From Ophelia neglecta (lineage: Eukaryota), in contig OZ260661.1 in assembly GCA_965285935.1 (NCBI GenBank), positions 144,522,001 through 144,586,000 of the forward strand: a stretch of DNA of 64,000 bases, written 5' to 3'. The notes below the pieces were generated by a model. The model ran no database searches. It was not told the DNA's origin and saw nothing but the letters and a program-made list of their open reading frames with translations. Positions within the stretch are counted from its first letter, which is position 1. Every line of letters starts with the position of its first letter. This document shows positions 10,943-62,921 of the stretch, one piece after another. A program made the translations under genes and the position numbers.

Positions 10943-11020
10943 ATGTCCACTCTACATTCATTCCACGCAACGCGGCACATGGAAGCCGAGGAGACGAGAA
11001 TATGGAGAGCTTCGTGGAGG
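10943..11020 (+). CDS. Candidate alternative first exon MSTLHSFHATRHMEAEETRIWRASWR (phase 0)
   Basis: ATG, 26 open codons, AGG|GTAAGT. Same length and E-x-x-IW-x-A-x-W motif as 50612-50689. Confidence 0.6.
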
Positions 11021-11185
11021 GTAAGTGTCTTTGCTATACTTATCCCGACCAGCAATTGGTTTCCGAAAATTCCAGAAAATGCACTGCACGCAGCACGCAG
11101 ACATTTCCTGTAAGTGATTTGCTTATCTAACACTCCTGTGTTAGGAAATCATTCACTGGCATATCTCAGTGAGGTCATATTAGGT

Positions 11186-11470
11186 CGTATCTCAGTGACC
11201 AAATGTCATATCTCATTGACTTAATGTCGTTTCACATTGACCGAATGTCATATCTCAATGACAATATATCATATTTCAGTGACCAAATGTCATATCTAAG
11301 TGACCAAATGTCATATCTCAGTGACCAAATGTTATGTCTCAGTGACCAAATGTCATATCTCAGTGACCAAATGTAAATGTCATATCACAGCAACCAACTG
11401 TCATATCACAGCAACCAAATGTCATATCGCATCAACCAAATGTCATATCACAGCAACCAAATGTCATATC
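11186..11470. repeat. 21-bp minisatellite (cagtgaccaaatgtcatatct shifting to cagcaaccaaatgtcatatca)
   Basis: About 13 copies visible. Confidence 0.9.
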
Positions 11471-11515
11471 GACAACTCATTCTACTTGCGATAACTCCTT
11501 GATTTACACTTTACA

Positions 11516-11700
11516 CTAGGCCCGCTCTCCTAAGTTTAAGGATTTGATTAGCCCATTACTGATGGGGTGAGACCGAAATAATCGTACTTTCCAGTGCCAA
11601 GGATTGAGTTTAGGTCCAAAATGGTCTAAGCACCTACATCTTGATTTTAATCCTAGGTTAGAGTAAATTGTTAAGACAGTTTCAAGAAACCTAAGCACAG
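11516..11700 (+). mobile_element. Degenerate copy of PIF/Harbinger-like MITE family B
   Basis: Shares taagtttaaggatt.gattagccc, tgattttaatcc and gttaagac..tt.cagaaacc with 45272-45508. Confidence 0.6.
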
Positions 11701-13732
11701 TGACTAAGTCCCCAATGCACTTCACGAACAAACCAAATACACAACACACAACCCATTTTTTCAACTATTTATGAAATATGAGATAATCCATCTATTTATA
11801 TTATTGATGTTTATACTTGATTACGCTTGTCAAAATTTGATATTGAAATAGTAGCGATTCAACGTGGTCGTTCGCTAATACAGGGCAGGAGCGAACCGAC
11901 ATCGCCGTGCACTAACACCGGGCAGGACTAAATAGACATCATTTAGTCTCAGCCTCATTTCCTCAATAAGGAGTGATTAGTTTGTTCCCTTTTCACTCTT
12001 ACTAATGTCTGTTTATCCACTGGAACCCTATGTATTGAGTTTCGCTACAGTGCCTCTTTACAGAGACCATGTTATACAAACATCCGAGGTGATTAATCTT
12101 TTATAAGTTTTCCCAAATGATCATTACATTTTGTACTAGAGGCCAAATCGTTACCTTTTACCTGTGTTCACTGTCATAGGAATCGCTAGGTGTTTGTCAT
12201 ACATTGTTAATTAGCAGAAAAGTCATGTTTGACTCCTCGCTCAAATAACACGGAAAATATCGACCATCCACTATGCCCATAAAAAACTAATAGACTGTGT
12301 TAATAGTTAATATTTTATTATCCCTTCGGATTTATACAGGTCGTGTATGCCTTGGTATAGAGATACAGCCACAAAGTGATCAATATCTCAGAGTGAACAA
12401 TACTAGGTCTGTCTGGGATGGTTCGGCGTCTAAAGGTACACCTGGTGAAGTACCACTAAATTTTACTCTTCAGACAGTCATTGCTCGGACAGATATCTTC
12501 AGGTAGTAGTATATAAAGCGGTTGACGGCGTTTTGTTATTCTAATTTATACTTTATTGATTATCTGACGATGTTAAAACATCAACCTACACAATTAGGAC
12601 ATAGTACAATAATGTCTACAGTTTAGGACTAGGTTCCCCCGTTACTGGTTGTCTGCGATACTGGATTTGGGCCACATATACGTCCCGTGGCGTCCAATCA
12701 TAGTTTGCTTCCCGTCAGAAGCAAATGGGCCTTACTTTATTAATGCATCGCTTCATTAATATAAAAATAATCGTCATCACTATGATATTATTGATTATGA
12801 CTTGCTGCATAAAACAGACCAGTGCTGTAGCTGCGGAAGCAGATTGATTAAAGGATCTATCTTAATATTGCTGCTGGCCACTGATTGATTCATTCTTTCA
12901 TGGCAAGGCTTTAGAAACTGAATTTCAAAGTTCTCTCTTGTCAGATGATTGATGGTGAACCAAACATATTTTACTATGTTCTACAGATTATGACTATTGA
13001 TCCAATTCGTTAATGAGAATTGATTATCAGTTTCCAAGGTGACTGTGGGTTTAAAACAGCCATGCAATAAAAATTTATATGAATTTGGAAAATACCGCAA
13101 GCCAATAGCTTCATTAATTGCAAAAAAAGGCAAATTATGACAAAAAGCCAATATAATGTACAGTTTTAGAGTGTAAATTGGCTCAACAATTGAGATCCAC
13201 AATCAACAACGACTAGGGAAGCACGGCAGTGGCAGAGTGAGGCTGGCCGTCATATTGTAATCTGGCAGCGCGGTAAAAGACGGGGGTCTTCTCCAAGGCC
13301 AGTTAATCATCTCTGGCACAATCCATATAAACCACTCTTACCAATTAAGATGATTGCCTGTGATTCGGTTTGCCGGAGGTGGCTAGCTAGAACTACAGAC
13401 TGCTGAGTCAAAAGGAGCTTTAGTTTGGCTCAGTGCGAATACAACAAACTGTTATATATACGCTGATGCTAGTTAAAGCACAAGGAAAAATAACAGTTAA
13501 TGGCTTTGAGAGTTGTTGGCTCTAACTGAAAACTAATTTGCTGGAGAAGTCTGCGCTATAGAATTGTGGCTGGATCTTCACCAACATAGGTAACTAATGG
13601 GAGTGTATTACAAAAGGACAGGTGATTTCATATTTCGCTAATACTTGTGATAGGCAGTATCACTGGAAATACTAAACGAAGGAAGACAGTAGAAATCTCT
13701 TTCATTGTCCGTGTCCGCCGTTCACACTCAGG

Positions 13733-13771
13733 ATGTACACAGGAGTTCACTCGAGCAGGGCAAACGACAAG
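13733..13771 (+). CDS. Candidate alternative first exon MYTGVHSSRANDK (phase 0)
   Basis: ATG, 13 codons, AAG|GTTAGT. Short enough to be a chance match. Confidence 0.4.
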
Positions 13772-14874
13772 GTTAGTTTGGTTAACAAACTAAACATCCT
13801 CTCATTGTAATGTAAATATGTGGTTTATTTGTTTCCATGCTGTTATGGTTTGTTGTGCCATAATAGTAGTTTGCATGCAGTAATTCCCGATTTAACTAGC
13901 AGGGGTTAACTTTAAAAACCCCCACTTGGTCAATCCACTATAATGTTCACCTTATAATTGCCCTCAATCCAGTATGGAAATTATGTATTTCCTCTTGGAG
14001 CTATTGTGGAAAAATGCGGAATGAAGATGAAAGAGAAGTTATATTGTGCAAGGCGCCGGCGCGTTGAACTAAACATACAATGAAGAATGTGTGCTTTGTG
14101 TATGAAGAATGACTGCTCTATTTTGATAATAGGCAAGAGAGTGCTGTTTTTATTATATCATGTTTCTATCCGGCATAAGAATTCTATTCGGTTTGAGTTG
14201 AAGTCGATCTAGTCCATGTTGTATCAGATTGGGGAAAGCCTGTCTGTCCTTTATTGAATCAGATTTTTTAAATAATAACTTTTAAATTTATGTTATCTTG
14301 TATAAGATCAAAGTTATATCATTTGTATCGTTCTGTAGTAAATACTACAAAAGAAACATTTATCCACAATACATATTCTCATCAAGCATTGTGGTTATTT
14401 GAAAAAATAACGTTAATTATTTAATTTGATGGACACATTACTATCATTTACGGATTTGTTGCCTTTCTCCGGAGCTAGTTTGCATGTCAGATTGCCCTTC
14501 CGTGTTTGTACTGTATTTATACTTAACATACGAACTTTAGCAGAGGTATGTAACCCTGTAGGACTTCTGTGCGATCGGGCCCTCATCATGGACACTGTTG
14601 ACTATTTCTTATTGCCAGTTTTATCGATATTTTGTTTGAAATTTTGTAACAGGTTTCTTTACTGTTGAGATATTTATTAATGGGTGTGGGGCTGTGGCTG
14701 CGGGTTGATTTTGGACCGTTTTGATGGACTATTCTTGACTAATAGTTTGCATTTGTCTGACGGGTATGCGCTCCCGTTTTTTTAAGAATTCACACATCGT
14801 GCGTCCACATTTTACAAGGGGATATGAATTTAATTTTGGAATTGACTTGTTTTCTCGTAACTTACATACATATT

Positions 14875-15052
14875 CATTAAAACCTGTCTAATCAGGTCAG
14901 TCAAGAAACTGGAAAAACTGACCACATTATGCAGGTGCCCTTAATAGGCAGGTCAGTTAACACCGGAATAAATGGACATTGTGCAATTAGTTAGTGACCT
15001 TAATTGGCAGGTGACCTTATTACACAGGTGACCACAAACACAGGTTTCACTG
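14875..15052 (-). mobile_element. MITE related to family A (internal GTGACC rather than GTGGTC motifs)
   Basis: 178 bp, right end CAGGTTTCACTG-TA, degenerate left end cattaaaacctg. Confidence 0.75.
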
Positions 15053-15519
15053 TAATGGAAAGGACAGCTAATTTAAAGCCTAGACTATCATACAGCCTCA
15101 TAAAAACGCGCAACTCTTGATGTAAAATGTTAATGAACGAAGGCAGGATTGCCTCTCGCTGTGGACATAAGCTGTCGATACTCTCCCACAAATTAGCCTT
15201 CCTTACAGCAGGAACGAGTTATTTGTGCGAATGCCATCAATCACATGTCAACCCGGAGCCCTATCCGATGGCCTGATGGTCTTCACATGCAGTTATAACA
15301 TGTAAGTGTGGGGTATCGATTGTTACAAAACAGGCAGAGGGATATGAAATGATGATAACATGACAGTTAGGGTATTGATTGGTACAACAGGCACACAGTT
15401 GATATATGGAGATATCATGGTAGTTAGGGTAATGCGTGTAACAGCACACAGTGGGGTCTAACATGGAGAAAAAAACATGCCAGTTAGTGTCAGACTGTGG
15501 TAATATCATGTCACTTATT

Positions 15520-15747
15520 GGGCTTTTGATTAAAAGCGGAGGCGCGGAGCCTTGCGGAGGTGAAATCAGAAATTAGAACAGAGCACTAGACCTATCAAAC
15601 CTGTCCCTAACCCTCCCCCTAACCCTAAAATTAACCCTCCGTCCTAACCCTTTCCTTGCTGACGATTATTTACTTCATGCCACTCAGAAATACTCATGAC
15701 CTCCGCCTCCGCATAGCCTCCGAACCTCCGCGTTTAATCAATAGCCC
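15520..15747. mobile_element. MITE with ~41-bp TIRs, 6-bp TSD (CTTATT) and internal CCCTAA motifs
   Basis: Left GGGCTTTTGATTAAAAGCGGAGG, right CCTCCGCGTTTAATCAATAGCCC, with CTTATT at 15514-15519 and 15748-15753. Confidence 0.85.
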
Positions 15748-15811
15748 CTTATTAAGTGTTATAACATACACTGAGATGACGTATTACGAGTTTTTCGGGA
15801 GACATGAGGTG

Positions 15812-16645
15812 CTATATGGATAGACCACGCCAGTGAGATTGTCGGAGATGGTTTCAGCAGACCGGCCTAGACTTCCTGACCTTCAGTCTATATGTATAGT
15901 TCACGTCAGTGAGATTGTTGGAGATGGTTTCAGCAGACCGGCCTAGACTTCCTGACCTTCAGTCTATATGTATAGATCACGTCAGTGAGATTGTTGGAGA
16001 TGGTTTCAGCAGACCGGCCTAGACTTCCTGACCTTCAGTCTATATGTATAGTTCACGTCAGTTAGATTGTTGGAGATGGTTTCAGCAGACAGGCCTAGAC
16101 TTCCTGACTTTCAGTCTATATGTATAGTTCACGTCAGTGAGATTGTTGGAGATGGTTTCAGCAGACAGGCCTAGACTTCCTGACTTTCAGTCTATATGGA
16201 TAGTTCACGTCAGTGAGATTGTTGGAGAGGGTTTCAGCAGACCGGCCTAGACTTCCTGACTTTCAGTCTATATGTATAGTTCACGCCAGTGAGATTGTTG
16301 GAGATGGTTTCAGCAGACCGGCCTAGACTTCCTGACTTTCAGTCTATATGTATAGTTCACGTCAGTGAGATTGTTGGAGATGGTTTCAGCAGACCGGCCT
16401 AGACTTCCTGACTTTCAGTCTATATGGATAGACCACGTCAGTTAGATTGTTGGAGATGGTTTCAGCAGACCGGCCTAGACTTCCTGACTTTCAGTCTATA
16501 TGTATAGTTCACGTCAGTGAGATTGTTGGAGATGGTTTCAGCAGACAGGCCTAGACTTCCTGACTTTCAGTCTATATGGATAGACCACGTCAGTTAGATT
16601 GTTGGAGATGGTTTCAGCAGACAGGCCTAGGCTTCCTGACTTTCA
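15812..16645. repeat. 76-bp tandem repeat, ~11 near-identical copies
   Basis: cagtgagatt recurs at 15831, 15907, 15983 and onward with no spacers. Confidence 0.97.
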
Positions 16646-22128: not shown

Positions 22129-22206
22129 ATGAACGCTGGGGCGTCCACCTCGACAGCTGTTCAAGATACACACAAGAGGCAGGCACAGGACGACCTGGAT
22201 CTAGAG
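22129..22206 (+). CDS. Candidate first coding exon MNAGASTSTAVQDTHKRQAQDDLDLE (phase 0), DPP10-like N-terminus
   Basis: aacATG, 26 open codons, GAG|GTAGGT, TATA-like tatataaata at 22051. Resembles from memory the human DPP10 start MNQTASVS. Confidence 0.65.
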
Positions 22207-22579
22207 GTAGGTAAAAAAGGTCACAAAAAGCTGGTACATGATGAACTTGATATAGTATAGGTCAAGATGGCCAGAGGAGTCAGGTACAAGACGACCTGGA
22301 TCTATAGGTAGGTTAATATACGCATAGGAGGCTGATACAGGACGGCCTGGATGGAAGCGGCGAAAGTAGACTTTGAAGAGACCACTCATTAGGGACATGG
22401 TACAAAAATTCCATAGGAGCACTGTTTAAATAAGGAAATATGTTTGTTATCACCTGCTTCCTAGCCTGTGAATCGGAATATTCCCTCATCATGCTTTACT
22501 AGGTTTACTTTACGGGAAATCATATATTTTCCCTCACGTTTTGATTTTCTGTACATAGCCAGTGTATTTTTATCTATTA

Positions 22580-23839: not shown

Positions 23840-23871
<32 letters not shown>

Positions 23872-25771: not shown

Positions 25772-25803
<32 letters not shown>

Positions 25804-32260: not shown

Positions 32261-32413
32261 ATGGCAGACACGATTGAGATATGTGGCACAAGAAATCAGT
32301 TGGGCCAACAGAGCTCGGCTTATGCGGATTTTAAGCTAGTCAGACAGGAGGTTAGAAATTCAAAAACTGCCTCGTTTAATGGAAACTGTCGACAATACCG
32401 GAGTGAAATATGC
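32261..32413 (+). CDS. Candidate alternative first exon MADTIEICGTRNQLGQQSSAYADFKLVRQEVRNSKTASFNGNCRQYRSEIC (phase 0)
   Basis: In-frame TGA directly before the ATG, 51 open codons ending exactly at GTAAGT (32414). Confidence 0.5.
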
Positions 32414-32784: not shown

Positions 32785-32817
32785 ATGGAGGAGGAGGAGG
32801 ACGACGAAACATATCCG
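32785..32817 (+). CDS. Candidate alternative first exon MEEEEDDETYP (phase 0)
   Basis: Strong Kozak context gaccATGG, 11 codons, CCG|GTTAGT. Confidence 0.5.
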
Positions 32818-34939: not shown

Positions 34940-35656
34940 GTCAACATCACAATACCCGGCCAATATGTAAAAATTCACCAACATTACAATACCCGGCCAA
35001 TATGTCAAAACTCACCAACATTACAATACCCGGCCAATATGTCAAAACTCACCAACATTACAATACCCGGCCAATATGTCAAAACTCACCAACATTACAA
35101 TACCCGGCCAATATGTCAAAACTCAGCCAACATCACAATACCCAGCCAATATGTCAAAACTCACCAACATTACAATACCCGGCCAATATGTCCAAACTCA
35201 CCAACATTACAATACCCGGCCAATATGTCAAAACTCACCAACATTACAATACACGGCCAATATGTCAAAACTCACCAACATTACAATACCCGGCCAATAT
35301 GTCAAAACTCACCAACATTACAATGCCCGGCCAATATGTCAAAACTCACCAACATTACAATACCCAGCCAATATGTCAAAACTCACCAACATTACAATAC
35401 CCGGCCAGTATGTCAAAACTCACCAACATTACAGTACCCGGCCAATATGTCAAAACTCACCAACATTACAGTACCCGGCCAATATGTCAAAACTCACCAA
35501 CATTACAATACCCGGCCAATATGTCAAAACTCACCAACATTACAATACCCGGCCAATATGTCAAAACTCACCAACATTACAATGCCCGGCCAATATGTCA
35601 AAAAATAGTTTTGACATATTGGCATATTGGCCGGGTATTGTAATGTTGGTGAGTTT
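34940..35656. repeat. 37-bp tandem repeat (~18 copies) ending in an inverted copy
   Basis: Unit caccaacattacaatacccggccaatatgtcaaaact, with reverse-complement copies at 35608-35656. Confidence 0.97.
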
Positions 35657-36068
35657 AACCCGGTTAACCGCAGGGCTGGACATGGGGCGTGCGTAGACCA
35701 GGGCGTAGGGACCCGTATCATGAAATCTCAGGGCATATTTCATCTCTGTCCAAAGTTAACCACTCGTTTGTTTTGTGTGCTGCATCATAGAAAACTGGTT
35801 ACTACTTCTCATTGCGAGTAGTATCAAGTTTATGTATTATTAGCATTACAATTGTATTTACTGTTTGGGAGCTAGAGATTCATTTGTTGATATGTGTGGG
35901 GCTGTGGCTGCTGCTTCCATGTACCTTAGGACTGATTTCATGGACTAGTCTCGATCAATGATTTGGCTTTGTCTCCCAGGTGTCTAGTCCCGTTTTGTTG
36001 TGGTTTGGTATCTTAATTCGGCGTAGGTACAGTATGTCTTTTTCGGGCGTTTGGGCTTTGGTCGGTCC

Positions 36069-36547
36069 ATAAGTAGAGATGTGTTTTGTTCTGGCGTACT
36101 GCCTAAGGTGGATAAGTAGAGATGTGTTTTGTTCTGGCGTACTGCCTAAGGTCGATAAGTAGAGATGTGTTTTGTTCTGTCGTACTGCCTTAGGTCGATA
36201 AGTAAGGAAGTGTTTTTTTCTGGAGTACTGCCTAAGGTCGATAAGTAGAGATGTGTTTAATTCTGGCGTACTGCCTAAGGTCGATAAGTAGAGATGTGTT
36301 TTTTTCTGGAGTACTGCCTAAGGTCGATAAGTAGAGATGTGTTTTGTTCTGTCGTACTGCCTTAGGTCGATAAGTAAGGAAGTGTTTTTTTCTGGAGTAC
36401 TGCCTAAGGTCGATAAGTAGAGATGTGTTTTGTTCTGGCGTACTGCCTAAGGTCGATAAGTAGAGATGTGTTTTGTTCTGGAGTACTGCCTAAGGTGGAT
36501 AAGAAGAGATGAGTTTTGTTCTGTCGTACTGCCTTAGGTCGATAAGT
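36069..36547. repeat. 43-bp tandem repeat (~11 copies) with degenerate continuation to ~36900
   Basis: Unit gataagtagagatgtgttttgttctggcgtactgcctaaggtc. A variant pair recurs 172 bp apart. Confidence 0.95.
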
Positions 36548-38458: not shown

Positions 38459-38488
38459 ATGGGACCGTTCAATCCCAGCTTTATGAAG
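38459..38488 (+). CDS. Candidate alternative first exon MGPFNPSFMK (phase 0)
   Basis: ATG, 10 codons, consensus donor AAG|GTAAGT. Short. Confidence 0.4.
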
Positions 38489-41644: not shown

Positions 41645-41892
41645 CACATGGGTCTGGTATACAGACCCTTATTGGCACCTCCCTGTCTTAACAATACAGA
41701 ACTTACCCCCCCTCATAGTGTCCCATTGTGACTCTTTACGTATCGGTATCGGTCTGACAACACCTCGTGCTTGAGATGTTAATCTACAACCCCGAGGGTT
41801 GACGGAAGGCATTATAGCCCCACGGACTTAAATGGCAAGCTACTTCTCTTGGAAGTTTCACAACTCCTGTACGGGCTACTGAGCAGCAGACG

Positions 41893-42054
41893 ATGACATA
41901 TTGCTATTTGACCCTCGAAGTACATCAAGGCCGTTTCATTTCTGATGTATTGGTGGCAAGGGACTCAAGGATGGAAACTGCTAAAGAAATGGATAACATA
42001 AAACTTTTGGCATCTCGCATATGGATTGCTCGGGACCCATTTACACGGGGCTCT
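41893..42054 (+). CDS. Candidate alternative first exon ...METAKEMDNIKLLASRIWIARDPFTRGS (phase 0)
   Basis: 54 open codons from the ATG to TCT|GTGAGT. RIWIA echoes RIWRA (10943) and TIWQA (50612). Confidence 0.4.
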
Positions 42055-42265
42055 GTGAGTTTTATATGTATTATGGCTGTCTTCTGAACACGCCCGCATT
42101 CAGTGACGGTTTTCGAATTAGCCCTGGTACATTACCTCTGTAAAGAAGCATAAGGGGAGTTAAATCAAGCTTGCTGTTAAAAGTAAACTTGATATAGAAT
42201 CTGTTCTGTCTGCGTTTTTTAAAAGCGTTTACTTGTTTGTATTCACCTTATTTCGTGTTCAAGTA

Positions 42266-46681: not shown

Positions 46682-47077
46682 ACCACCAAAGCGTGGCCGA
46701 GTGGTTAGGGTGTCCGCCTCGCAAGTGGGGGATCGGGGTTCGAACCTCGATCGCACCAAGGCGTGGCCGAGTGGTTAGGGCGTCCGCCTCGTAATTTGGA
46801 GATCGGGGTTCACTTCTCGATCGCGTCAAACCTAGATGTAAAAATAGGTACTGATAGCTCCCCTGCACGGCGCCCGGTATTTCGGGGTAGTATCAGGACT
46901 GGTCAACCCGGTGTCAGTATAATGTGACTGGGTGGGGTTCCCTGTCTGGTGTCTACGGCAGGTACTCCAGTCATGCAGCACTCTAAAGAGGGCATTGAGC
47001 CCACTGTCACAAGTAGACAAGAAGACACTGTGGCGATATGAAAGTATTGAAAGCCACGAAAAACCCCAAAACAACAA
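46682..47077 (+). mobile_element. tRNA-derived SINE (Meta/MESC-like) with duplicated head and 12-bp TSD
   Basis: A box TGGCCGAGTGG and B box GGTTCGAAC, core GTGTCAGTATAATGTGACTGGGTGGGG, (ACA)n tail, CCTTCTAGAAGG at 46670-46681 and 47078-47089. Family assignment is from memory. Confidence 0.9.
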
Positions 47078-47110
47078 CCTTCTAGAAGGTATCTGATTGT
47101 TTATCTAGAG

Positions 47111-47937: not shown

Positions 47938-50611
47938 ATTAATACCTTGATCCTGGTAAATGGAAACTACGATTAACGTGGTGTCAATTAATCGACAATA
48001 GTCATTAAATTAAATCCGAAAACTTATAACGCTTTTAGAAACCCTGGCCAGAAAATTAACGCCAGAAAATTAACGCGGAGGGGATTTTTTTTTCGCGAAT
48101 TTCTTGTTAATCGCGCAAATTCAAAGCTTGCCAAGTTTTCCTGGATAACGGTATCAAGCTGTGTTGTTAATGGCGCTCCTTCTGAATGCCAACAATTGTC
48201 ACAGCGTAAATGTTTAACGGCCTGACGCATGTCACACACGTCTTCCCTCACACCTCGATGATTAGGAGGCATGCCTCCCTATCCATTAACCTGTCAGAGC
48301 CGCTGGTATTCTCTCTCTGAACGTCGTATAATAACAACCCCTTAAAGCGCTGAGCGCGGAAAGGGTGTTTGAAAAGAGGCGTGTAATGATTACTGAAAAC
48401 AATCAGTCGTAGAGCTCTGTCTCCAAAGTATATAGCCGAGAGAGTTGGGTTTTTACAAAGGTCAATTCTATACCTAGCTTTAACGTACTTGAGCATCTTT
48501 CTTATGACATCAGGACAAGTTGAGTCTTTCATTAAACCTCCGGTGAGCGCAGAGGTTTTTCATGGAATCATTCTGGCTTAGACTTGTTGGGACAAAAGCA
48601 AATAGCCATCGCAGGCCTTACTTGTGAGGAAAATACTCATGCGATACGGTAAAAGGAGGATAACTGGTGTCAACTTTACAGACGGCCCAAACGACACCTC
48701 AAGTAGAGGCAGAAGAAACTATAATATGGCGGGTTCCGAGGGAGGTAGAATTGTTCACCATACTTAGGTCAGATCAAAAACAGTCCATTGAATTCTCGCC
48801 TTTTTAATGGGAAACGATCTGCTCACTTCTGGCGAGCAAAAGCCACTTCTGGGTTGTTTTGGTGGCATTAAACCGAGAAGCAGTCTCTGGAAGCAGACTT
48901 ATCTCGGATTTGTTATCAAACTAGTTAGAAATAACCAGAGATAAAAGAAGAAGACAGACTGTTTTAGTTTGAAATACAAGTCCCATTGTTGTTCGCGCAA
49001 ATATGTGTAATGAGAATTAGGGAGCTAAATTACCAGTAGCCTGGTGTTTATTGAAAGCATCTCGGCTGAGAGGACATTGCTGTGAGTTGAAGTGGGTCGG
49101 TGTTTGCTCAAGCCACATAAGAAAACGGAAGTAGGATGTTAGGTGTTGGCGGGGAGAGTTTGCTGGAGGAACCTTCCGAATCTCTCAAATATTTGTCTAA
49201 AAATTCATTATGTATCTGGTCAACGGGAGTTTTCACCAAACAAACAGCAGTGATGACTTCATTTCGGCCAGGGTCAACAAGAACCGCATGGCACATTGGT
49301 CCTAATGATTTTAGCTGGGGATATTGTCCTGGACAAAGACCACAGTAATTACTGCGGTTCGCGGACAGAGTGTGTCTTTTAACAGCATATGACATTAAAT
49401 CAGTGTTCACCAGTGTCAGGAGGACACTATCGAGTATCATAAACTGGTGTCCAATGGCTCTGGTTGTAGGCGAATATATAAAACCAAAACGGAGATATTC
49501 GCGAGGGTCACATTAGCCGCCAGCATCCATTGTTTTTCCCTATGCTTCCACTAGCTGCATTGGAACAATATTAACTAATACATGTAGTTGGCGTCCAATT
49601 TCACCACAACGCAGCTTGTAATAGGACAGAAAACGTCCACCATAGATTGTGTTAGCCAGTTAATAAGTTATCTGTGTGCAGAATCTCGACGAAATTGGAC
49701 AAATAAGAATAGAGATATATGACACAAAAACTGGACAGCCGTCGGATATTTGATAATTGTCGTCTAGATGCTCTGCCAAAAGAGTGTACGTGATTTAACG
49801 TGTTATCTCATACAACGATTGTGCGCGATGTATGTGTGTATTTGCCAGTTTAGTGACGTCATGTTTATATAGCGCTTTGAAAGTCGCCTTATAGACACTT
49901 TGGCAAATTGTGGAAAATAATCCAAAAGAAACTTTATTCCAATGAAGTGGGAATAACGGTACCTAAGGTGAGTCCCGTGGGATGCCCTTAGTTGAGAGAC
50001 AACATCATTTTTGAGGAGATGGAAACAGGTTGAGGCTTTCACCGTGTTCACTCTCCAGAGTGTCCGGGGCAGTTAATGCTCGATTTGGGAATGCTTACTT
50101 TACTCAGATGCGCTCGCTTGGATAGAAAACAAAAGTGCAGGGCTCAGACCTGAAGGCGCACTGTGTTCAGCTCTGGAGGACCGGTATCTACAGTGTGAGT
50201 GTCGATTTTGAATATAAACCCGTCCCTAATGACTCATTCTTCTGTTGTGTAGGGCGTGTTGCCTGTATATGCCCGACAGGCCTAATGAATACATGTGCTC
50301 GACACACATATACAATGTTTCCCTCTGAATGCATCCCAATCCATTAGGCTTGGCACCGCACTCGGCGGCCTCCTTCAGGCTGTGGCGTGAACCACGGCTG
50401 TCGGCTGGGAGAGGACTGCTCGGATAGCTGTAAATACGCTGTCAAACTGTTCAGGCTTGTAGTGTATTATAGTATACATCATCGTTGACCATCAGGAGCC
50501 TTTAATTCACAATCACAGGGAGTATTAACCATAATACCGATTCAGATTGTTTCCTGGGACCATCTGTGATTTTAAGTCGTTGCGAAACTAATTTAATCGC
50601 AGGGAGACTCT

Positions 50612-50689
50612 ATGGCAGATTCACAGAAAGTTCCCGCTGTGGTGAAGACAGCGGAAGACGAGGTGACAATATGGCAGGCCCCGTGGGAG
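50612..50689 (+). CDS. Candidate alternative first exon MADSQKVPAVVKTAEDEVTIWQAPWE (phase 0)
   Basis: ATGG, 26 codons, GAG|GTAAGT. Shares length and motif with 10943-11020. Confidence 0.65.
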
Positions 50690-50865
50690 GTAAGTAAAAC
50701 ATCGTGAGGACAATATGGCAAGCGCCGTGGGAGGTTAGTAGGCCGGAGTAAATAAAATTGAGTCCCCTTATTGTAAGGTCCCACACTCCTAGACTGCTTT
50801 TACCTATCCTAACCCCAAAAAGTCTCTTGGTTTCCAAAATTATTATTTTTAATTTCATGGATATA

Positions 50866-53484: not shown

Positions 53485-53591
53485 CTGTTTTCATTGACCA
53501 GGATAGAATTTAAGAACAAAAGGCCTCGAGTTAAGACCAAATCCAGCTTCTAGAGTACAGTGCTTAGCCTGATTCTAGAAACCGGGCCCAG
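53485..53591 (+). mobile_element. MITE family B 3' fragment
   Basis: Contains ttaagaccaaatccagcttc and ends agaaaccgggcccag. Confidence 0.7.
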
Positions 53592-54943: not shown

Positions 54944-56769
54944 TATGATTTTATTTATATTCCTTAAGAATATTTAAGGATTGTTTCCATAATAGTAAAA
55001 GTTGTTGTAAAATTTCGCGATTATTTTCGTTTTTTGTGTGTACACATCTATGTTTATCAGTCTCAATTCTAACGGAACAATGCGATTGCTTTGCACAATG
55101 CTTCACTCTTTAGCAACTGGTGTATATCCTTCATTCATTTTGTTAAAGGTTTGAAAACCAATTAAGAATTAATAATAGTCATGGGTGAAACCTCAACGTC
55201 ATTGTTGCACAGTCAGCCCCGAAACGGGCGGTGCAATTGACATGATTACTGGATATACAGATGAAATGTGTGCAATCATTGCACTTTTGTTAGTTTTTTA
55301 ACTTTGAAATGAAATTAAGTCCTTTTTTTTGTAAAAAATGACCAGTTTTCAAAATAAAATGTCCTAATGGACAAGGTAAGGAAATAGAAAAGAGAAAATT
55401 GATACGGTGTGTGGAATCATTTCTTCTAGTGGAATCAAGGTTTTTCATCTATCCGAATTTCCCATACTTTGCTCGGCTTGCAACAATAGCACTAGAGTCC
55501 TCATGCAACTTACATGGAGGGGCTGTAGACTCCGGTGTTATCGATCATTATAATGCAGTCATGCGTTTTTACTCTTAAGGACTGTCTCGGCTGGCACGAA
55601 CTGTAAAATGCTATAAAGAAAAGTTTGTGATAATTCTAGGATTATGCATATCATACTCAAGTGTACCGCCCTATACCTAAACCAGTTATGGTCTCTGTGC
55701 TCAGCTTGAATAGGATCAGTCGGGGATGATGTAATAATTCTAGTTCAGCCTGCCAGCAAGGAGGTGACAGCACTGCATACCAATAGTCTGCACTTGAATG
55801 TGGGGCTAGACTACAGATTTGCAGCGGTTCCATGTTCATTGCGAAACCTGTAGCTATTACACAAATGTGAAATTTACCTGAATGGAAAGCCCTCTAAAAT
55901 GTTAATCATCCCTGAAAGTTTTGTTTTGATTACTTAAACAAGCACTAAGTAAGGGCTTTTAAAACATCATTCCCATGTTAAATTCCCATATGAACAGCTG
56001 AAAGTAGCCCCACTTATCCCAGCCTTACCACTGCCTTTTAATTGCAATCAGCTTTGGAGGTAAGAAAAGTGGTTGTTGGACAGCAGTATGAAACATATCC
56101 GACTGGCCCTATTGTCCTCTGTGTGGTAACGCTATTGAGAAATAAGCACACCTGTTCACAAGGGCAAAGTAGGTCCTATTTATTTTCACATGGATTAAGG
56201 CGGTACTTTTATTTGCCATCAAGTCATTGTGCAAAAAAGTGCAGGAAGTGTTTTAGCTGTTAAACAAGAGTATAGGTGGGAATATCCACAGGATGTAAAG
56301 CCTGCCCGTAACTTTATTGCTATAGTAACCATGTATCACTCAAACAATCGACAATCAAAACATTATTCAAAATGTATAATATGTAAGGGTTGTGAATTTG
56401 AAATACAGAAAAGGAATACCATTGGCCGACTTGGGTTTCTTATGACAAAGCCAAGTAAACAATATGTACTACTGTTTCAACCTAACATTTACCTCCCAGC
56501 AGACACTGGAACCCAGCTAAAAGCCCAACAGATCTGTATCTCATAGTGACAACCAAGTTAGATCGGATCTTCCGTCTACCTTCGAACTCACCTGTATCCT
56601 CACTTGTCAATGACTTCAGGCTAGTGAGGGTGCCCATCTCCCTTTGCAAACTGCTACATCCACAAGACGCGAAGTTGTCCCACCATCATCTCACTTTTTT
56701 GTTTGATATAGCTCCTTTTGATGTCTTTGCTATTGACTACTAAGTGACATCAATATAAGTTTTAATTAG

Positions 56770-59700
56770 GATTAATGTATTAGGGCCTGTGCTGCTGGTT
56801 CCTGGGTATTGATGTATGTGGGCCTGTGCTGCTGGTTCCTTGGGTTGATGTATGTAGGCCTGTGGCGGCTGGTTCCTGGGTATTGATGTATGTGGGCCTG
56901 TGGCTGCTGGTTCCTGGGTATTGATGTATGTGGGCCTGTGGCTGCTGGTTCCTTGGGGTTGATGTATGTGGGCCTGTGGCTGCTGGTTCCTCGAGATTGA
57001 TGTATGTGGGCCTGTGGCTGCTGGTTCCTGGGTATTGATGTATGTGGGCCTGTGGCTGCTGGTTCCTGGGTATTGATGTATGTGGGCCTGTGGCTGCTGG
57101 TTCCTTGAGATTGATGTATGTGGGCCTTTGGCTGCTGGTTCCTTGAAGTTGATGAATGTGGGCCTGTTGCTGCTGGTTCCTTGGGATTGGTGTATTAGGG
57201 CCTGTGGCTGCTGGTTCCTTGGGATTGATGTATGTGGGCCGGTGGCTCCTGGTTCCTTGGGATTGATGTATGTGGGCCTTTGGCTGATGGTTTAAGGGGA
57301 TTGATGTATGTGGGCCTTTGGCTGATGGTTTAAGGGGATTGATGTTTGTAGGCCTGTGGCCGCTGGCTCCTTGGGATTGATGTATGTGGGCCTGTGGCTG
57401 CTGGTTCCTTGGGATTGATATATGTGGGCCTGTGGCTGCTGGTTCCTTGGGATTGATGTATGTGGGCCTGTGGCTGCTGGTTTCTGGGTATTGATGTATG
57501 TGGGCCTGTGGCTGCTGGTTCCTTGGGATTGATGTATGTGGGCCTGTGGCTGCTGGTTCCTTGGGATTGATGTATGTGGGCCTGTGGCTGCTGGTTCCTT
57601 GGGATTGATGTATGTGGGCCTGTGGCTGCTGGTTACTTGGGATTGATGTAAGTTGGTCTTTGCAGCTGGTTCCTTTATATTGATGGATGTGGGCCTGTTG
57701 CTTCTGGTTCCTTGAGATTGATGTATGTTGGCCTGTGGATGCTGGTTCCTTGGGATTGATGTATGTGGGCCTGTGGGTGGCTGCTGGTTCCTTCGGATTG
57801 ATATATGAGGGCTGTGGCTTCTGGTTCCTTGGGATTGATGTATGTGGGCATGTGGCTGCTTGTTCCGTGGGATTGATGTATGTGGGCCCGTGGCTGCTGC
57901 TTCCTCGGGTATTGATGTATGTGGGCCTGTGGCTGCTGGTTCCTTGGGATTGATGTATGTAGGCCTGTGGGTGGCTGCTGGTTCCTTTGGATTGATGTAT
58001 TAGGGCCTGTGGCTGCTTGTCCCTTGGGATTGATGTATGTGGGCCTGTGGCTGCTGGTTCCTTGGGGTTGATGAATGTGGGCCTGTTGCTGCTGGTTCCT
58101 TGGGATTGGTGTATTAGGGCCTGTGGCTGCTGGTTCCTCGGGATTGATGTATGTGGGCCTGTGGCTGTTGGCTCCTTTGGATTGATGTTTGTGGGTCTGT
58201 GGCTGCTTGTTCCTTGGGATTGATGGATGGGGGCCAGTGGCTGATGGTTCTTTGGGATTGATGTATGTGGGCCTGTGGCTGCTGGTTTCTGGGTATTGAT
58301 GTATGTGGGCCTGTGGCTGCTTGTTCCTTGGGATTGATGTATGGGGGCCTGTGGCTGATGGTTCTTTGGGATTGATGTATGTGTGCCTGCGGCTGATGGT
58401 TCAAGGGGATTGATGTTTGTGGGCCAGTGGCTGATGGTTCCTGGGGATTGATGTAAGTGGGCCTGTGGCTGCGTGTTCATGGGGATTGATGTATGTGGGC
58501 CTGTGGCTGCTGGTTCCTTGGGATTGATGTATGTGGGCCTGTGGCTGCTGGTTACTTGGGATTGATGTATGTTGGCCTGTGGCTGCTGGTTCCTTTATAT
58601 TGATGGATGTGGGCCTGTTGCTTCTGGTTCCTTGAGATTGATGTATGTTGGCCTGTGGATGCTCGTTCCTTGGGATTGATGTATGTGGGCCTGTGGCTGC
58701 TGGTTCCGTGGGATTGATGTATGTAGGCCTGTGGGTGGCTGCTGGTTCCTTTGGATTAATATATGAGGGCTGTGGCTTCTGGTTCCTTGGGATTGATGTA
58801 TGTGGGCCTGTGGCTGCTTGTTCCGTGGGATTGATGTATGTGGGCCCGTGGTTGCTGGTTCCTTGGGTATTGATATATGTGGGCCTGTGGCTGTTGGCTC
58901 CTTTGGATTGATGTATGTGGGTCTGTGGCTGCTTGTTCCTTGGGATTGATGAATGGGGGCCTGTGGCTGATGGTTCTTTGGGATTGATGTATGTGTGCCT
59001 GCGGCTGATGGTTCGAGGGGATTGATGTTTGTGGGCCAGTGGCTGATGGTTCCTGGGGATTGATGTAAGTGGGCCTGTGGCTGCGTGTTCATGGGGATTG
59101 ATGTATGTGGGCCTGTGGCTGCTGGTTTCTGGGTATTGATGTATGCGGGCCTGTGGCTGCTGGTTCCTTGGGATTGATGTATGTGGGTCTGTGGCTGGTG
59201 GTTTCTTGGGATCGATGTATGTGGGCCTGTGGCTGCTGGTTCCTTGGGATTGATGTATGTGGGCCTGTGGCTGCTGGTTACTTGGGATTGATGTATGTTG
59301 GCCTGTGGCTGCTGGTTCCTTTATATTGATGGATGTGGGCCTGTTGCTTCTGGTTCCTTGGGATTGATGTATGTGGGCCTGTGGTTGCTGGTTCCTTGGG
59401 ATTGATGTATGTAGGCCTGTGGGTGGCTTCTGGTTCCTTCTGATTAATATATGAGGGCTGTGGCTTCTGGTTCCTTGGGATTGATGTATGTGGGCCTGTG
59501 GCTGCTTGTTCCGTGGGATTGATGTTTGTGGGCCCGTGGTTCCTGGTTCCTTGGGTATTGATGAATGTGGGCCTGTGGCTGCTGGTTCCTTAGGATTGAT
59601 GTATGTAGGCCTGTGGGTGGCTGCTGGTTCCTTCGGATTGATGTATTAGGGCCTGTGGCTGCTCGTCCCTTGGGATTGATGTATGTGGGCCTGTGGCTGT

Positions 59701-60170
59701 TCGTCCCTTGGGATTGATGTATGTGGCCTTGTGGCTGCTCGTCCCTTGGGATTGATGTATGTTGGCCTGTGGTTGCTTGTTCCTGGGGATTGATATATGT
59801 GGGCCTGTGGCTGATGGCTCCTTGGGTTTGATGTATGTGGGCCTGTGGCTGTTGGTTCCTCGGGATTGATGTATGTAGGCCTGTGGCTGTTGGCTCCTTT
59901 GGATTGATGTATGTGGGTCTGTGGCTGCTTGTTCCTTGGGATTGATGGATGGGGGCCTGTGGCTGATGGTTCTTTGGGATTGATGTATGTGTGCCTGCGG
60001 CTGATGGTTCGAGGGCATTGATGTTTGTGGGCCAGTGGCTGATGGTTCCTGGGGATTGATGTATGTGGGCCTGTGGCTGCGTGTTCATGGGGATTGATAT
60101 ATGTGGGCCTGTGGCTGATGGCTCCTTGGGATTGATGTATGTGGGCCTGTGGCTCCAGGTTCCTTTGGCT
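56770..60170. repeat. 38-bp satellite (~89 copies) with block duplications
   Basis: Unit gggattgatgtatgtgggcctgtggctgctggttcctt. Diagnostic variants recur three times. Confidence 0.98.
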
Positions 60171-60738
60171 TCTAGCTGCTGGTTATTTCATCCAATTTAT
60201 ATAGAGAATATTGTATGTTTTTTGTAAAGGTCCAAAGAAAGGCTCCTATCTACGCGACCCACACGAACTCACGACCAATTAAGTACCAGCTATGTGCATG
60301 ATGTACTTTATATAGTTACCATAAGAAGGCAGCCAGGCTTGTTCTTCAGTAAATGCCTCGTTTTGTATAGTTGATTACCTACATTGGCGTCATAAACATA
60401 GTTTTATTCATGTTCAATAGACTTCAGGCCACACATGGGTTGTTGAATGTCAACCCATTAAGATAGTGAATTATTACCTAAGTGCTCTGCATGAAAAAGC
60501 ACGCAGCAATGTATTCATGGCGCTACCATGGGTCCAGTGCATGTTGTGTCTAACTAATAAACAAGGAGGCCATTGGTGAATATGCGTGCCAACTTGAGGC
60601 ATACACTATATCCGTAAATTATTAGGCACACTAGACATGTATGGGCAATTTGCTAGTTACTAATTGACTGTCAATAACTATACAGCAATATGTTACCGGA
60701 TATCATCAACTGACGAATTAACTCGCTATGTACTATTG

Positions 60739-60867
60739 TTGTAGCCAGAGGACACACCGCTTTAACATGGTGAAGTGGCCTCGCCAGGAATAGCGCTGAT
60801 TGTCATCACAGTTCATGTTTTTCTCTTTACGTAATAAGTATCAAATTTCATCGCCAAAGCAACCCGC
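60739..60867 (+). promoter_or_regulatory. Conserved non-coding block upstream of Cys-rich exon 1
   Basis: Homologous to 62257-62385 at a similar distance from the ATG. Confidence 0.55.
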
Positions 60868-61305
60868 ATTGCGTGGGCCAGTGAGGAAGAGAAGGGAGGT
60901 ATTATTGGCACATTCAGTCGTTTGAAGTCACAGTGTCTATTAATGGATGAAGCCTGATGTGCATTGATCTGAACAAATGACGGCGCAAGTCCGAGTGATC
61001 TAACAAGACTATTGTTCAGACATATTGGGAACAGTCAGAGTGATTAATCTAATTTGTCTATTGTTCAAACATATTGGACACGCATTATTCACAGGCTTAA
61101 TGTATTCTAGAAGTATTTTCGATTGACATACATAGATCCGAATAGAAGTAAAGGATAAACAATAGACACTGTCTAGCGCCTAGTCCAGGGATGTTAAACA
61201 TGGTAACTTCAGAATAGAAGATCGTACTTGGTGCGTGACAGTGCACACGGTACTTAATTCCGGCGTTTTCTGATGTGTTAGCGAGGTTAAAAGTTGTCTA
61301 TTAGG

Positions 61306-61440
61306 ATGTCTCGCGTAGCAAGCCAGAGTGGGGCGGTGGTAGGGACAACATACCATGGACTTTACCCCGAGTACCGAGCCAATGGCCACTGTTCACTGGT
61401 CACCTGCCTCTGTGAACTGTGCTCTTGGTGTCTGGGTCTG
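61306..61440 (+). CDS. Cys-rich first coding exon, copy 1: MSRVASQSGAVVGTTYHGLYPEYRANGHCSLVTCLCELCSWCLGL (phase 0)
   Basis: ATG, 45 codons, CTG|GTAAGT. 28/42 aligned residues identical to 62796-62921, with many synonymous changes and a 9-nt in-frame indel. Confidence 0.8.
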
Positions 61441-62256
61441 GTAAGTAGCCACTGACATTACATCTATGGTGCGGTGATTTGTACTCGCTTCTACCCGTTT
61501 AAATGTAAAGGAAATACAAATCCCCCCACCCCCTGTTCAAAGACACATTGGACTAGACCATAACCGCTACCTGTATGCAGCTCCTGGTGCGGACCAAGAA
61601 GCCGAGTATGGTGTCAATTCTTTAGACCACACCTTTATTACTCATCAATACTTACCCGTCCCGACCAGTAGGGCAATGGTCCCATTTCCGTCAGACCACT
61701 CCTGAATGCTTCTCTGCCTGTGACTCCGCGACTGACCTCTATATACAATGGACATCGTACCAGCTGTGTGTTTTATTAATGTCACTCTGAAAACCACTCT
61801 CCAATTGCGTTAATCCATTGTTAGCAACCTACATGTATAAATTGCCATCTGTTACTAGCCATATGCTTTGTTCAGTAAGCACGGTACTAACATCATTGTA
61901 CAGTTTATACACAATTAATGACGATCCATACCTGGCTAGTTGATTGTCGCCAGTTTAAGGGGGTGTATTGTTCCTAGGGATATTTGTATGTGTAGCGCTA
62001 TTACATGAATGGCAAGGTATACTTTCTACTGCCTGTTGGAACTCCCTTGCTAATGAGTAGTTCTCCAAACAATGTCAATGTGCGCTTTGTATTTGTTCTG
62101 GACACATGTTAGAAGTGAGACATGCAAGATACGGATTGATCTCTAGGTATATGATCAATCTTGTGCAAGCTGCCAATCGACAGACAATAGTCAAACAGCC
62201 ATTTGTATGACCATCGATCTAAGCGACTGATGACATAAATCACACTAGTATCATGA

Positions 62257-62385
62257 TTGTAGCCAGGGGACATACCACTTTAACATGGTGAAGAGGCCTC
62301 GCCAGGGATCGCCCTGATTGATATCGCTGTTCCTTTTTTTTTTCATTACCTAATGGGTATCATATTTCATTGCCACAATACCCGC
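62257..62385 (+). promoter_or_regulatory. Conserved non-coding block upstream of Cys-rich exon 2
   Basis: ttgtagccag.ggaca.acc.ctttaacatggtgaag.ggcctcgccagg shared with 60739-60867. Confidence 0.55.
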
Positions 62386-62795
62386 TGATGTGTTGGTCAT
62401 GAAGCTGGGAAAGGGAGACATTACATGTTGCATGTCGTACCATGATATCACTGGGTGGAGTCCGATATACACTGACTATAACAAGGAGACTCACTGCGTT
62501 ATTGTTGTAAAAAGATATCTATATACCCAGGTCGGAAGGATAAGCTGATTCAGTGATTAGGCGTCTAAGTGGGCCATTGTACAGTCATATTGTACAAATT
62601 TTGCACCCATTTGATATATTCAAGGAATTCGCTTAAAGAGTCACAGCCACAAATTCTGGAATGATCCGCAATGGTACTGTAGAAACAAGGATGTTTGCTT
62701 TTCTGTGAATATCTATCAATAATAAACTCAGGGGTGATTTTTCTTGTTTGGTCTGGTAATGAATGCTGTTGGGTAAAGGACGGTTTATTAGTATA

Positions 62796-62921
62796 ATGTC
62801 TCGGATAGCTAGCCAGAGTGGGGCGGGGGCGGGGACCGTTTACCGTGGATTGCACCCAGACTACCGTGATGCTGGACTGGTCACCTGCGTTTGTGAGATC
62901 TGCTCCTGGTGTGTCGGCATC
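62796..62921 (+). CDS. Cys-rich first coding exon, copy 2: MSRIASQSGAGAGTVYRGLHPDYRDAGLVTCVCEICSWCVGI (phase 0)
   Basis: ATG (an in-frame ATG also at 62763), 42 codons, ATC|GTAAGT. Paralogue of 61306-61440. Confidence 0.8.

What the first reader, a model, noticed from the sequence alone, without database searches (positions are those of the whole stretch)
10943..62921. Apparent gene desert hides a ~52-kb array of phase-0 alternative first exons (variable N-terminus cassette)
Seen: short + strand units that start at ATG, stay open and end exactly at a phase-0 donor, at 10943, 13733, 22129, 32261, 32785, 38459, 41893, 50612, 61306 and 62796, plus weaker ones. Two pairs are homologous at the protein level. 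I found no shared downstream coding exon between them. Established: vertebrate DPP6 and DPP10 use several alternative first exons spliced onto a common juxtamembrane/TM exon (RNWKGIAIALLVI), and some of these N-termini impose fast inactivation on Kv4 channels. Inference: the gene to the right of the window, possibly a tandem DPP4/6/10 paralogue given the neighbouring gene and the DPP10-like 22129 exon, has an expanded promoter-choice menu of cytoplasmic tails (acidic, Trp-motif, Cys-rich), organised like protocadherin or UGT1A variable-first-exon loci. The short candidates could individually be chance hits.
Basis: partly seen in the sequence, partly recalled or inferred. Interest (0 to 1): 0.9.

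Follow-up and report, generated by a model that had tools for sequence, protein, structure and literature searches.

The report
Alternative first exons of a DPP6/10-like gene

Summary
All ten units exist at the stated coordinates: ATG, open frame, GT donor in phase 0. It lies 743 bases beyond the window (window-extended 64743-64856) and encodes ELVGSGPSERNWRGI plus a transmembrane helix behind a phase-0 acceptor. It is exon 2 of a DPP4-family gene (gene B), a collinear tandem paralogue of gene A, whose coding sequence ends near window 4847.

Five units are supported by conservation:
- 10943 ("W2" type)
- 22129 ("a" type, DPP6a/DPP10a-like)
- 50612 ("W1" type)
- 61306 and 62796 (Cys-rich "M" type)

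Each has paralogous copies upstream of, and on the same strand as, other DPP6/10-like paralogues on chromosomes C1 and C9. These copies keep the ATG, the frame and the phase-0 donor, while the flanks do not align. In W1 and in the first 11 codons of the a-type, changes fall mostly or only at third codon positions.

The 41893 unit is conserved only as DNA. Units 13733, 32261, 32785 and 38459 have no support and fit chance.

RefSeq already annotates 10 or more N-termini on the same exon 2 in oysters, limpet, amphioxus, acorn worm and ticks, so this is a new member of a known kind. The scan had already noted the W-type exons upstream of gene A (s1-739816).

The parts
434..4847 (+). 3' exons of gene A, the left tandem DPP6/10-like gene. 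Holds the peptidase S9 exons with IAIWGW|SYGG, HGTAD|DNVHFQ and DNAH. The stop codon is near 4845-4847.
   Evidence: Pfam exon hits; collinear tblastx with gene B; tblastn with annelid protein P0196; reading frame to the stop
10943..11020 (+). W2-type alternative first coding exon: 26 aa ending ..EETRIWRASWR, GTAAGT donor at 11021 in phase 0. It lies 53.7 kb upstream of exon 2.
   Evidence: Sequence. Paralogue of the same length, with ATG and a phase-0 GT, at C1:144437441 upstream of gene A. In-frame stop 8 codons upstream.
22129..22206 (+). a-type (DPP6a/DPP10a-like) alternative first coding exon: 26 aa starting MNAGASTSTAV, GTAGGT donor at 22207 in phase 0.
   Evidence: Paralogue at C1:144457942 with identical first 11 residues and six differences, all at third positions and silent. 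Ranks first of 11289 six-frame fragments with an HMM of invertebrate a-type tails. Orthologous tails are joined to exon 2 in other phyla.
41874..42090 (+). Conserved two-copy element containing the 41893 unit. It may be a non-coding exon, a regulatory element or a decayed exon.
   Evidence: 72% identity over 221 nt to C1:144484778-144484998, collinear, and the only other copy in the genome. The ORF and ATG are not kept in the gene A copy.
48667..48744 (+). Degenerate W2-type copy: GTG instead of ATG, ..IIWRVPRE, weak donor gtagaa. Probably a pseudo-exon.
   Evidence: tblastn and alignment
50612..50689 (+). W1-type alternative first coding exon: 26 aa, MADSQKVP..EDEVTIWQAPWE, GTAAGT donor at 50690 in phase 0. 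It lies 14 kb upstream of exon 2.
   Evidence: Five intact copies of exactly 78 nt upstream of five paralogues on C1 and C9. Variable columns by codon position 8/6/20, p = 0.006.
50710..50739 (+). Partial duplicate of the W1 end (TIWQAPWE) with a GTTAGT donor and no ATG.
   Evidence: Motif scan and tblastn
60651..60856 (+). Conserved element upstream of the 61306 exon, possibly a promoter or 5' UTR.
   Evidence: 74% identity to window 62165-62376; the corresponding element is also found upstream of gene A's M exon
61306..61440 (+). M-type (Cys-rich) alternative first coding exon, 45 aa, GTAAGT donor at 61441 in phase 0.
   Evidence: Four copies genome-wide that differ only by in-frame indels and all end at gtaagta
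62170..62399 (+). Conserved element upstream of the 62796 exon, possibly a promoter or 5' UTR.
   Evidence: 72% identity to C1:144508094-144508318 upstream of gene A's M exon
62796..62921 (+). M-type alternative first coding exon: 42 aa, MSRIASQSGAG...LVTCVCEICSWCVGI, GTAAGT donor at 62922 in phase 0. It lies 1.8 kb upstream of exon 2.
   Evidence: 79% aa identity to gene A's copy at C1:144509177 and 75% to C9:700066, which lies 7.4 kb upstream of another paralogue's exon 2
13733..13771 (+). Unsupported candidate unit (13 aa, GTTAGT donor)
   Evidence: No paralogue in 184 kb around the locus
32261..32413 (+). Unsupported candidate unit (51 aa)
   Evidence: Unique in the genome at the protein level
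32785..32817 (+). Unsupported candidate unit (11 aa, acidic). Its only lead is a resemblance to the N-terminus of Patella isoform P0460 (MEEEDDSTF..).
   Evidence: No second DNA copy; not picked up by an acidic-tail HMM; Patella N-terminus seen
38459..38488 (+). Unsupported candidate unit (10 aa)
   Evidence: No paralogue

Best explanation
The stretch between the two tandem DPP4-family genes is the extended 5' region of the right-hand gene (gene B). Gene B's shared exon 2 lies at window-extended 64743-64856 (C1:144586743-144586856).

At least five short exons lie 1.8 to 54 kb upstream of exon 2: 10943, 22129, 50612, 61306 and 62796. Each starts at an ATG and ends at a phase-0 GT donor. The proposed mechanism is that each is transcribed from its own promoter and spliced to the phase-0 acceptor of exon 2.

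The products would be type II membrane proteins that share the juxtamembrane ERNWRGI segment, the TM helix, the beta-propeller and an intact serine-hydrolase domain. They would differ only in a cytoplasmic tail of 26-45 residues. There are four tail classes: W2, a, W1 and Cys-rich M.

By analogy with vertebrate DPP6/DPP10 and fly DPP10, the tails most likely tune Kv4 (Shal) channel complexes. The a-type tail is the best candidate for a pore-blocking inactivation peptide.

Shown here: the exons, their phases, exon 2, the conservation and the coding constraint. Inferred: the splicing, the separate promoters and any channel effect.
For: - Exon 2 has a phase-0 acceptor and the predicted content. 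The same exon is found from vertebrate DPP6/10 to insects.
- Genes A and B are collinear paralogues.
- The exon order W2 - a - 41893 element - W1 - M - exon 2 is the same upstream of both genes.
- W1 occurs as an intact 78-nt ATG-to-GT unit upstream of five paralogues, and M upstream of three. Of the eight exon-2 copies in the genome, six have a W1 or M exon 1.8-20 kb upstream on the same strand.
- Coding constraint: W1 variable columns by codon position are 8/6/20 (p = 0.006). The first 11 a-type codons carry 6 of 6 silent changes. M copies differ only by in-frame indels. Flanks run at about 59% identity against 77% for the exon.
- Every supported ATG has an in-frame stop 5-11 codons upstream.
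- Tails of the a type are physically joined to ELVG..RNWRG in annotated or transcript-derived proteins of Patella, Arion, Octopus, Mytilus, Crassostrea and Lineus.
- RefSeq lists 10 or more different N-termini on this exon 2 in several phyla.
- MNQTA exon 1a of DPP6a/DPP10a confers pore-block inactivation (PMC9409431). Fly DPP10 is both a Kv4 subunit and an active peptidase (PMC4873792).
Against:
- No W-type or M-type N-terminus was found in any database protein, so their use rests on within-genome conservation only.
- The W2 pair shows no third-position bias (6/7/10).
- The a-type HMM scores are the best in the region but not significant on their own (E 0.13 and 0.25).
- A 54-kb first intron for 10943 is inferred from collinearity, not seen.
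Confidence: 0.78

Rival explanations
1. The full reading of the first stage: a 52-kb array in which all ten or more units, including 13733, 32261, 32785, 38459 and 41893, are used as alternative first exons in the manner of protocadherin/UGT1A variable exons.
For: Orthologues in oysters, limpet, amphioxus, acorn worm, ticks and shrimps are annotated with 10-15 or more N-termini. Some are only 1-7 residues long, so short units are plausible. The Patella N-terminus P0460 begins MEEEDDSTF, close to the 32785 unit.
Against: No paralogue or second copy exists for 13733, 32261, 32785 or 38459. The ORF of 41893 is broken in the gene A copy. Once the conserved exons are removed, the count of phase-0 units equals the background. 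HMMs of acidic and mollusc AF..E tails pick up none of them.
Confidence: 0.12
2. The conserved units are leftovers of duplicated 5' regions (pseudo-exons) or belong to separate short transcripts. Gene B would then use only the nearest exon (62796).
For: Decayed copies exist: 48667, 50710-50739 and the gene A copy of the 41893 element. No database protein carries a W or M tail.
Against: ATG, length, frame and donor are kept in copies whose flanks no longer align, including copies on another chromosome. Substitutions are concentrated at third positions. The a-type tail is joined to exon 2 in other phyla.
Confidence: 0.08
3. All units are chance ATG-to-GT open frames in an intergenic desert.
For: Short open frames ending at GT are common: 2-5 per strand/phase class in this region.
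Against: Rejected for five units by paralogous and orthologous conservation.
Confidence: 0.02

Closest known systems
Vertebrate DPP6 (DPPX) and DPP10 (DPPY) N-terminal variants (DPP6a/K/S/L, DPP10a-d) made by alternative first exons
   Same: Short, variable, ATG-initiated first exons are spliced in phase 0 onto a common exon encoding ELVGSxPxQRNW[KR]GI plus the TM helix. One variant begins MN-x-[TA]-[AG]-[ST], like exon 1a MNQTA.
   Different: The catalytic Ser/Asp/His are intact here. The W-type and Cys-rich M-type tails have no vertebrate counterpart. First exons are duplicated within the locus, and the whole unit is duplicated in tandem and on another chromosome. Splicing was not observed.
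Drosophila DPP10 orthologue (PMC4873792)
   Same: An invertebrate DPP6/10-type protein that keeps peptidase activity and acts as a Kv4 ancillary subunit. It is the best functional model for genes A and B.
   Different: No functional data exist for this genome. The insect N-termini seen here (MADHDNIYDDE type) differ from the W, M and a tails.
RefSeq-annotated DPP4-like / DPP6-like loci of bivalves, limpet, amphioxus, hemichordate, brittle star, ticks and shrimps, with isoform numbers up to X40 and 10-15 different N-termini among the members read
   Same: Many different N-termini sit on one ELVG..RNWRG exon 2, and an a-type tail is among them.
   Different: Those isoforms come from NCBI's annotation of other species. 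This locus has no annotation or RNA evidence available here, and its W and M tails are not seen in them.
Clustered protocadherin and UGT1A variable-first-exon loci
   Same: Several first exons are each joined to shared downstream exons, and some arose by local duplication (W1/W2/W2-pseudo; M/M').
   Different: The exons here are tiny (26-45 aa) cytoplasmic tails, not whole functional domains. They are few and heterogeneous rather than a uniform tandem array. Promoter choice is untested.

Membership tests
DPP6/DPP10-type gene architecture (alternative first exons on a common juxtamembrane/TM exon) | Common exon 2 with a phase-0 acceptor, encoding ELVGxxPxxRNW[KR]GI followed by a TM helix | tested here: met
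   cag|GAG acceptor at C1:144586743; 38 codons ELVGSGPSERNWRGIFISLLVIVVV..; 256 database hits including vertebrate DPP6/10
DPP6/DPP10-type gene architecture (alternative first exons on a common juxtamembrane/TM exon) | Several upstream same-strand exons that start at an ATG and end at a phase-0 donor | tested here: met
   Five units conserved with ATG, frame and donor
DPP6/DPP10-type gene architecture (alternative first exons on a common juxtamembrane/TM exon) | Each first exon is observed spliced to exon 2 in mRNA, from its own transcription start | not testable with these tools
DPP4 family (peptidase S9B) | DPPIV_N beta-propeller plus Peptidase_S9 hydrolase domain | tested here: met
   PF00930 and PF00326 exon hits for both genes; about 45-50% identity to annelid DPP proteins
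Inactive DPP6/DPP10 subfamily (vertebrate sense) | Catalytic serine of GWSYGG replaced | tested here: not met
   Both genes read IAIWGW|SYGGF, with HGTAD and a conserved His
Exon 1a (MNQTA) inactivation-ball variants DPP6a/DPP10a | N-terminus homologous to MNQTA[ST]VS.. at the start of a roughly 20-30 aa first exon | tested here: inconclusive
   MNAGASTSTAV is strictly conserved between genes A and B. It ranks 1 and 2 of 11289 fragments with the invertebrate a-type HMM, but E is 0.13 and 0.25. Similar tails occur in molluscs, a nemertean, chelicerates, a hemichordate, a brittle star and fish DPP10.
Exon 1a (MNQTA) inactivation-ball variants DPP6a/DPP10a | Confers fast N-type-like inactivation on Kv4 channels | not testable with these tools
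   Needs electrophysiology
Protocadherin/UGT1A-type variable-exon cluster | Tandem array of paralogous variable exons, each with its own promoter | tested here: inconclusive
   Two small duplicated families (W: 10943, 48667, 50612; M: 61306, 62796), with a duplicated upstream element for the M exons. The other units are unrelated to each other.

The most novel reading that the evidence does not exclude
The a-type exon (22129 here, with its twin upstream of gene A) would be the protostome counterpart of vertebrate exon 1a of DPP6a/DPP10a. If so, an auxiliary-subunit-borne inactivation peptide for Kv4 channels, and the multi-promoter menu of tails itself, date back to the bilaterian ancestor. 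The W-type and Cys-rich M-type tails would be additional lineage-specific gating, redox or trafficking modules kept in six paralogues.
Probability: 0.3. Interest if true: 0.7.

Novelty: new member of a known kind. Interest (0 to 1): 0.45.

Why it matters
In vertebrates, the choice of DPP6/DPP10 N-terminus sets how fast Kv4 A-type potassium currents inactivate. [quoted passage not shown]

This locus, together with the RefSeq isoform sets found on the way, suggests two things. The many-first-exons design is general to bilaterian DPP6/10-like genes. An MN..-type tail also occurs in annelid-like, mollusc, nemertean, chelicerate, hemichordate and echinoderm genes.

That gives a testable route to the origin of subunit-borne N-type inactivation. 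It also supplies two new conserved tail types, W and Cys-rich M, for electrophysiology. For annotation, it shows that a 60-kb "desert" between two compact genes is really the 5' region of the downstream gene.

Tried and rejected
- **Spliced models.** Exons were searched one by one by reference.
- **Large self-searches for low-copy conservation.** A 20-kb query was swamped by a high-copy repeat of about 390 bp, so I switched to per-exon queries.
- **Fetching the C9 paralogue regions and the rest of gene A's upstream region.** The 24 kb between C1:144458019 and 144482000 was therefore not scanned for twins of 32261, 32785 or 38459.
- **W or M tails in database proteins.** None was found among the 150 representative hits, the 46 and 120 full-length relatives or the isoform sets. 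The ORF around 62796 has no homologue of 34-106 aa. This blank says nothing about longer proteins.
- **W-type as a variant of the mollusc ..AF..[FL]E tail.** An HMM of that tail does not find W exons.
- **32785 as the arthropod/bivalve acidic M.D..Y[DE][DE]E tail.** Not supported by an HMM.
- **41893 as a coding exon.** The gene A copy has no ATG, an in-frame stop and frame-shifting indels.
- **"Related molluscs".** The best matches are annelid proteins (Paralvinella, Ridgeia, Lamellibrachia, Capitella) at 45-51% identity, against about 36-46% for molluscs.


Full report
**Observation.** The window is G000:C1:144522001-144586000.

Inside 10943-62921 and outside tandem repeats, my tally of the list gives 9 units on + strand phase 0. 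The other five strand/phase classes give 4, 5, 2, 4 and 3 (Poisson tail about 0.012). Removing the four conserved exons that match this donor pattern leaves 5 against a background of 3.6. The excess is therefore real, but it is carried entirely by a few exons. The remaining short units cannot be told from chance by counting.

**What flanks the "desert".** Exon-by-exon Pfam hits (DPPIV_N, Peptidase_S9) define two compact + strand genes:
- Gene A spans C1:144515852-144526769. Its coding sequence ends near window 4847.
- Gene B spans C1:144588232-144596158, beginning about 2.2 kb past the window end.

The two genes are collinear paralogues, exon for exon.

One block is 91% identical in protein between them: A 144511671-144511784 and B 144586743-144586856, which is window-extended 64743-64856. 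It begins at a polypyrimidine-cag acceptor on a codon boundary. It encodes ELVGSGPSERNWRGI followed by a hydrophobic helix.

A search of 1.84 billion representative proteins with this exon gave 256 hits. They include vertebrate DPP6/DPP10 and insect, chelicerate and mollusc proteins. Variable sequence sits directly in front of ELV... in these hits.

Both genes keep GW|SYGG, the Asp and the His. In this they resemble the fly DPP10 orthologue, which is both a Kv4 subunit and an active peptidase (PMC4873792).

*W1 type (50612).* This is a 78-nt unit, M.D..KVP..VKTAEDEV.IW[QH]APWE|gt. It occurs with ATG, frame and phase-0 GT intact at:
- gene A (C1:144491241)
- gene B (50612)
- C9:8988169 (+)
- C9:8936936 (-)
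- C9:8901696 (-)

A more diverged copy lies at C9:8996183. Each copy lies 2-20 kb upstream of, and on the same strand as, one of the eight exon-2 copies in the genome. Exon identity averages 77% against about 59% for the flanks. Variable columns by codon position are 8/6/20 (p = 0.006). The earlier scan note s1-739816 had flagged the gene A copies, and I confirmed them.

*W2 type (10943).* An intact twin of the same length lies at C1:144437441 (..EAEEAKIWRAPWK|gt), far upstream of gene A. A decayed copy lies at window 48667. Constraint is weaker for this pair (6/7/10).

*M type (61306, 62796).* There are four copies in the genome. The other two are C1:144509177, upstream of gene A, and C9:700066, 7.4 kb upstream of a C9 exon 2. 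All start MSR[IV]ASQSGA, carry a Cys cluster, differ only by in-frame indels and end at gtaagta. Similarity stops at the ATG and at the donor. A conserved element of about 200 bp lies a few hundred bases upstream of each.

*a type (22129).* A twin lies at C1:144457942. Its first 11 residues (MNAGASTSTAV) are identical to those of 22129, and the two differ there at six sites, all third-position and silent.

Tails of the form MN[SAY].[AG][ST]..[SV]...[DM][LM]E are directly joined to ELVG..RNWRG in full-length proteins. These come from Arion, other gastropods, Patella, Octopus, Mytilus, Crassostrea, Potamilus, Mya and the nemertean Lineus. Related MN.. tails occur in horseshoe crabs, a spider, Ptychodera and Amphiura, and as MNQTATVSH.. 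in fish DPP10.

An HMM built from 12 invertebrate tails ranks 22129 first and its twin second among 11289 six-frame fragments. The alignment runs from the Met to the donor. The E-values (0.13, 0.25) are not significant alone.

*Order.* The order W2 - a - 41893 element - W1 - M - exon 2 is the same upstream of both genes.

**Units without support.** The 41893 unit sits in a 221-nt segment that has exactly one other copy, collinear and upstream of gene A. That copy lacks the ATG and has a stop and frame-shifting indels. So it is conserved DNA, not a conserved ORF.

Units 32261 and 32785 are unique in the genome. Units 13733 and 38459 have no paralogue in the 184 kb examined. The one lead is that Patella isoform P0460 starts MEEEDDSTF.., close to the 32785 peptide. 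An acidic-tail HMM does not pick the unit up.

**Mechanism.** The best reading is alternative transcription starts with mutually exclusive splicing of one short first exon to exon 2. The introns would be 1.8, 3.3, 14, 42.5 and 53.7 kb. The products would be type II membrane peptidases identical except for a cytoplasmic tail of 26-45 residues.

Phase compatibility, in-frame stops 5-11 codons upstream of each ATG and the conservation pattern are shown here. Splicing, promoters and function are inferred.

By analogy with DPP6a/DPP10a, whose exon 1a motif MNQTA blocks the Kv4 pore (PMC9409431), the a tail is the best candidate for an inactivation peptide. The W and M tails have no known counterpart.

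**Known or new.** Alternative first exons of DPP6/DPP10 are textbook for vertebrates. NCBI annotation lists 10 to 15 distinct N-termini on this exon 2 among the members read per cluster. Examples are Magallana gigas (isoforms up to X40), Crassostrea virginica (X35), Mytilus, scallops, Patella (11), Branchiostoma (12), Ptychodera (12; isoforms up to X27), Amphiura, ticks and shrimps.

The locus is therefore a new member of a known kind. Three things may be new. The first is the W and M tail families. The second is the parallel retention of the whole first-exon set after tandem and inter-chromosomal duplication. The third is the hint that the a-type tail is pan-bilaterian, whereas the review read here (PMC9409431) describes exon 1a as conserved from fish to humans.

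**Limits.**
- There are no reads.
- The closest relatives are annelids at only about 50% identity, so orthologous loci of close species could not be compared.

Noticed in passing
window 3138-3390; also C1:144594099-144594708 in gene B: A 27-nt in-frame tandem repeat (9.4 copies, 93% matches) repeats the last codons of the exon ending ..IAIWGW together with its GTAAGT donor. It sits directly before the catalytic SYGG exon. The same kind of repeat is present at the same intron in the paralogue. Each copy offers a consensus donor that would add 9 residues. I have no explanation for it.
   Followed up: partly
window 56769-60165: A 38-bp G/T-rich minisatellite with 89 copies (3.4 kb; GC skew up to 0.44) lies directly upstream of the M-type first exons. 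The spurious ATG-to-GT units at 57574 and 57612 lie inside it.
   Followed up: partly
window 7700-8103: A high-copy dispersed repeat of about 390 bp. It gave 11233 first-look candidates, and all 39 scored copies are 94-97% identical on many chromosomes. It looks like a young SINE-like element. Lower-copy repeats lie at 10322-10505 and 14872-15053.
   Followed up: no
window 46684-47075 (-); window-extended 64111-64328 (+); C1:144505215-144505523: A tRNA-like SINE (contains a GGTTCAAACC-type box). Copies are 80-86% identical. One copy lies between the 62796 exon and exon 2.
   Followed up: no
window 15812-16645, 34942-35603, 36064-36547: Further minisatellites with periods of 76, 37 and 43/172 bp. 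The 37-bp array creates the long false ORF at 35076 and most of the minus-strand phase-1 units in the null count.
   Followed up: partly
G000 C9:707568, 8899301, 8920360, 9005092, 7175102, 7223551 and C1 genes A and B: The genome holds eight copies of the DPP6/10-type exon 2. Six of them have a recognisable W1 or M first exon upstream. The two most diverged (C9:7.17 and 7.22 Mb) have none detected.
   Followed up: partly
whole locus: The closest proteins are annelid (Paralvinella palmiformis, Ridgeia, Lamellibrachia, Capitella, and a Logan transcript P0196) at 45-51% identity, against about 36-46% for molluscs.
   Followed up: partly
RefSeq clusters P0181, P0172, P0175, P0152, P0237, P0230: Across bilaterian invertebrates one DPP6/10-like gene is annotated with 10-15 different N-termini among the members read (isoform numbers up to X40). 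Recurrent types include MN..(a-type), ..AF..[FL]E in molluscs and M.D..Y[DE][DE]E in arthropods. In two of the ten allowed literature searches, neither aimed at this question, I met no paper that describes this.
   Followed up: partly
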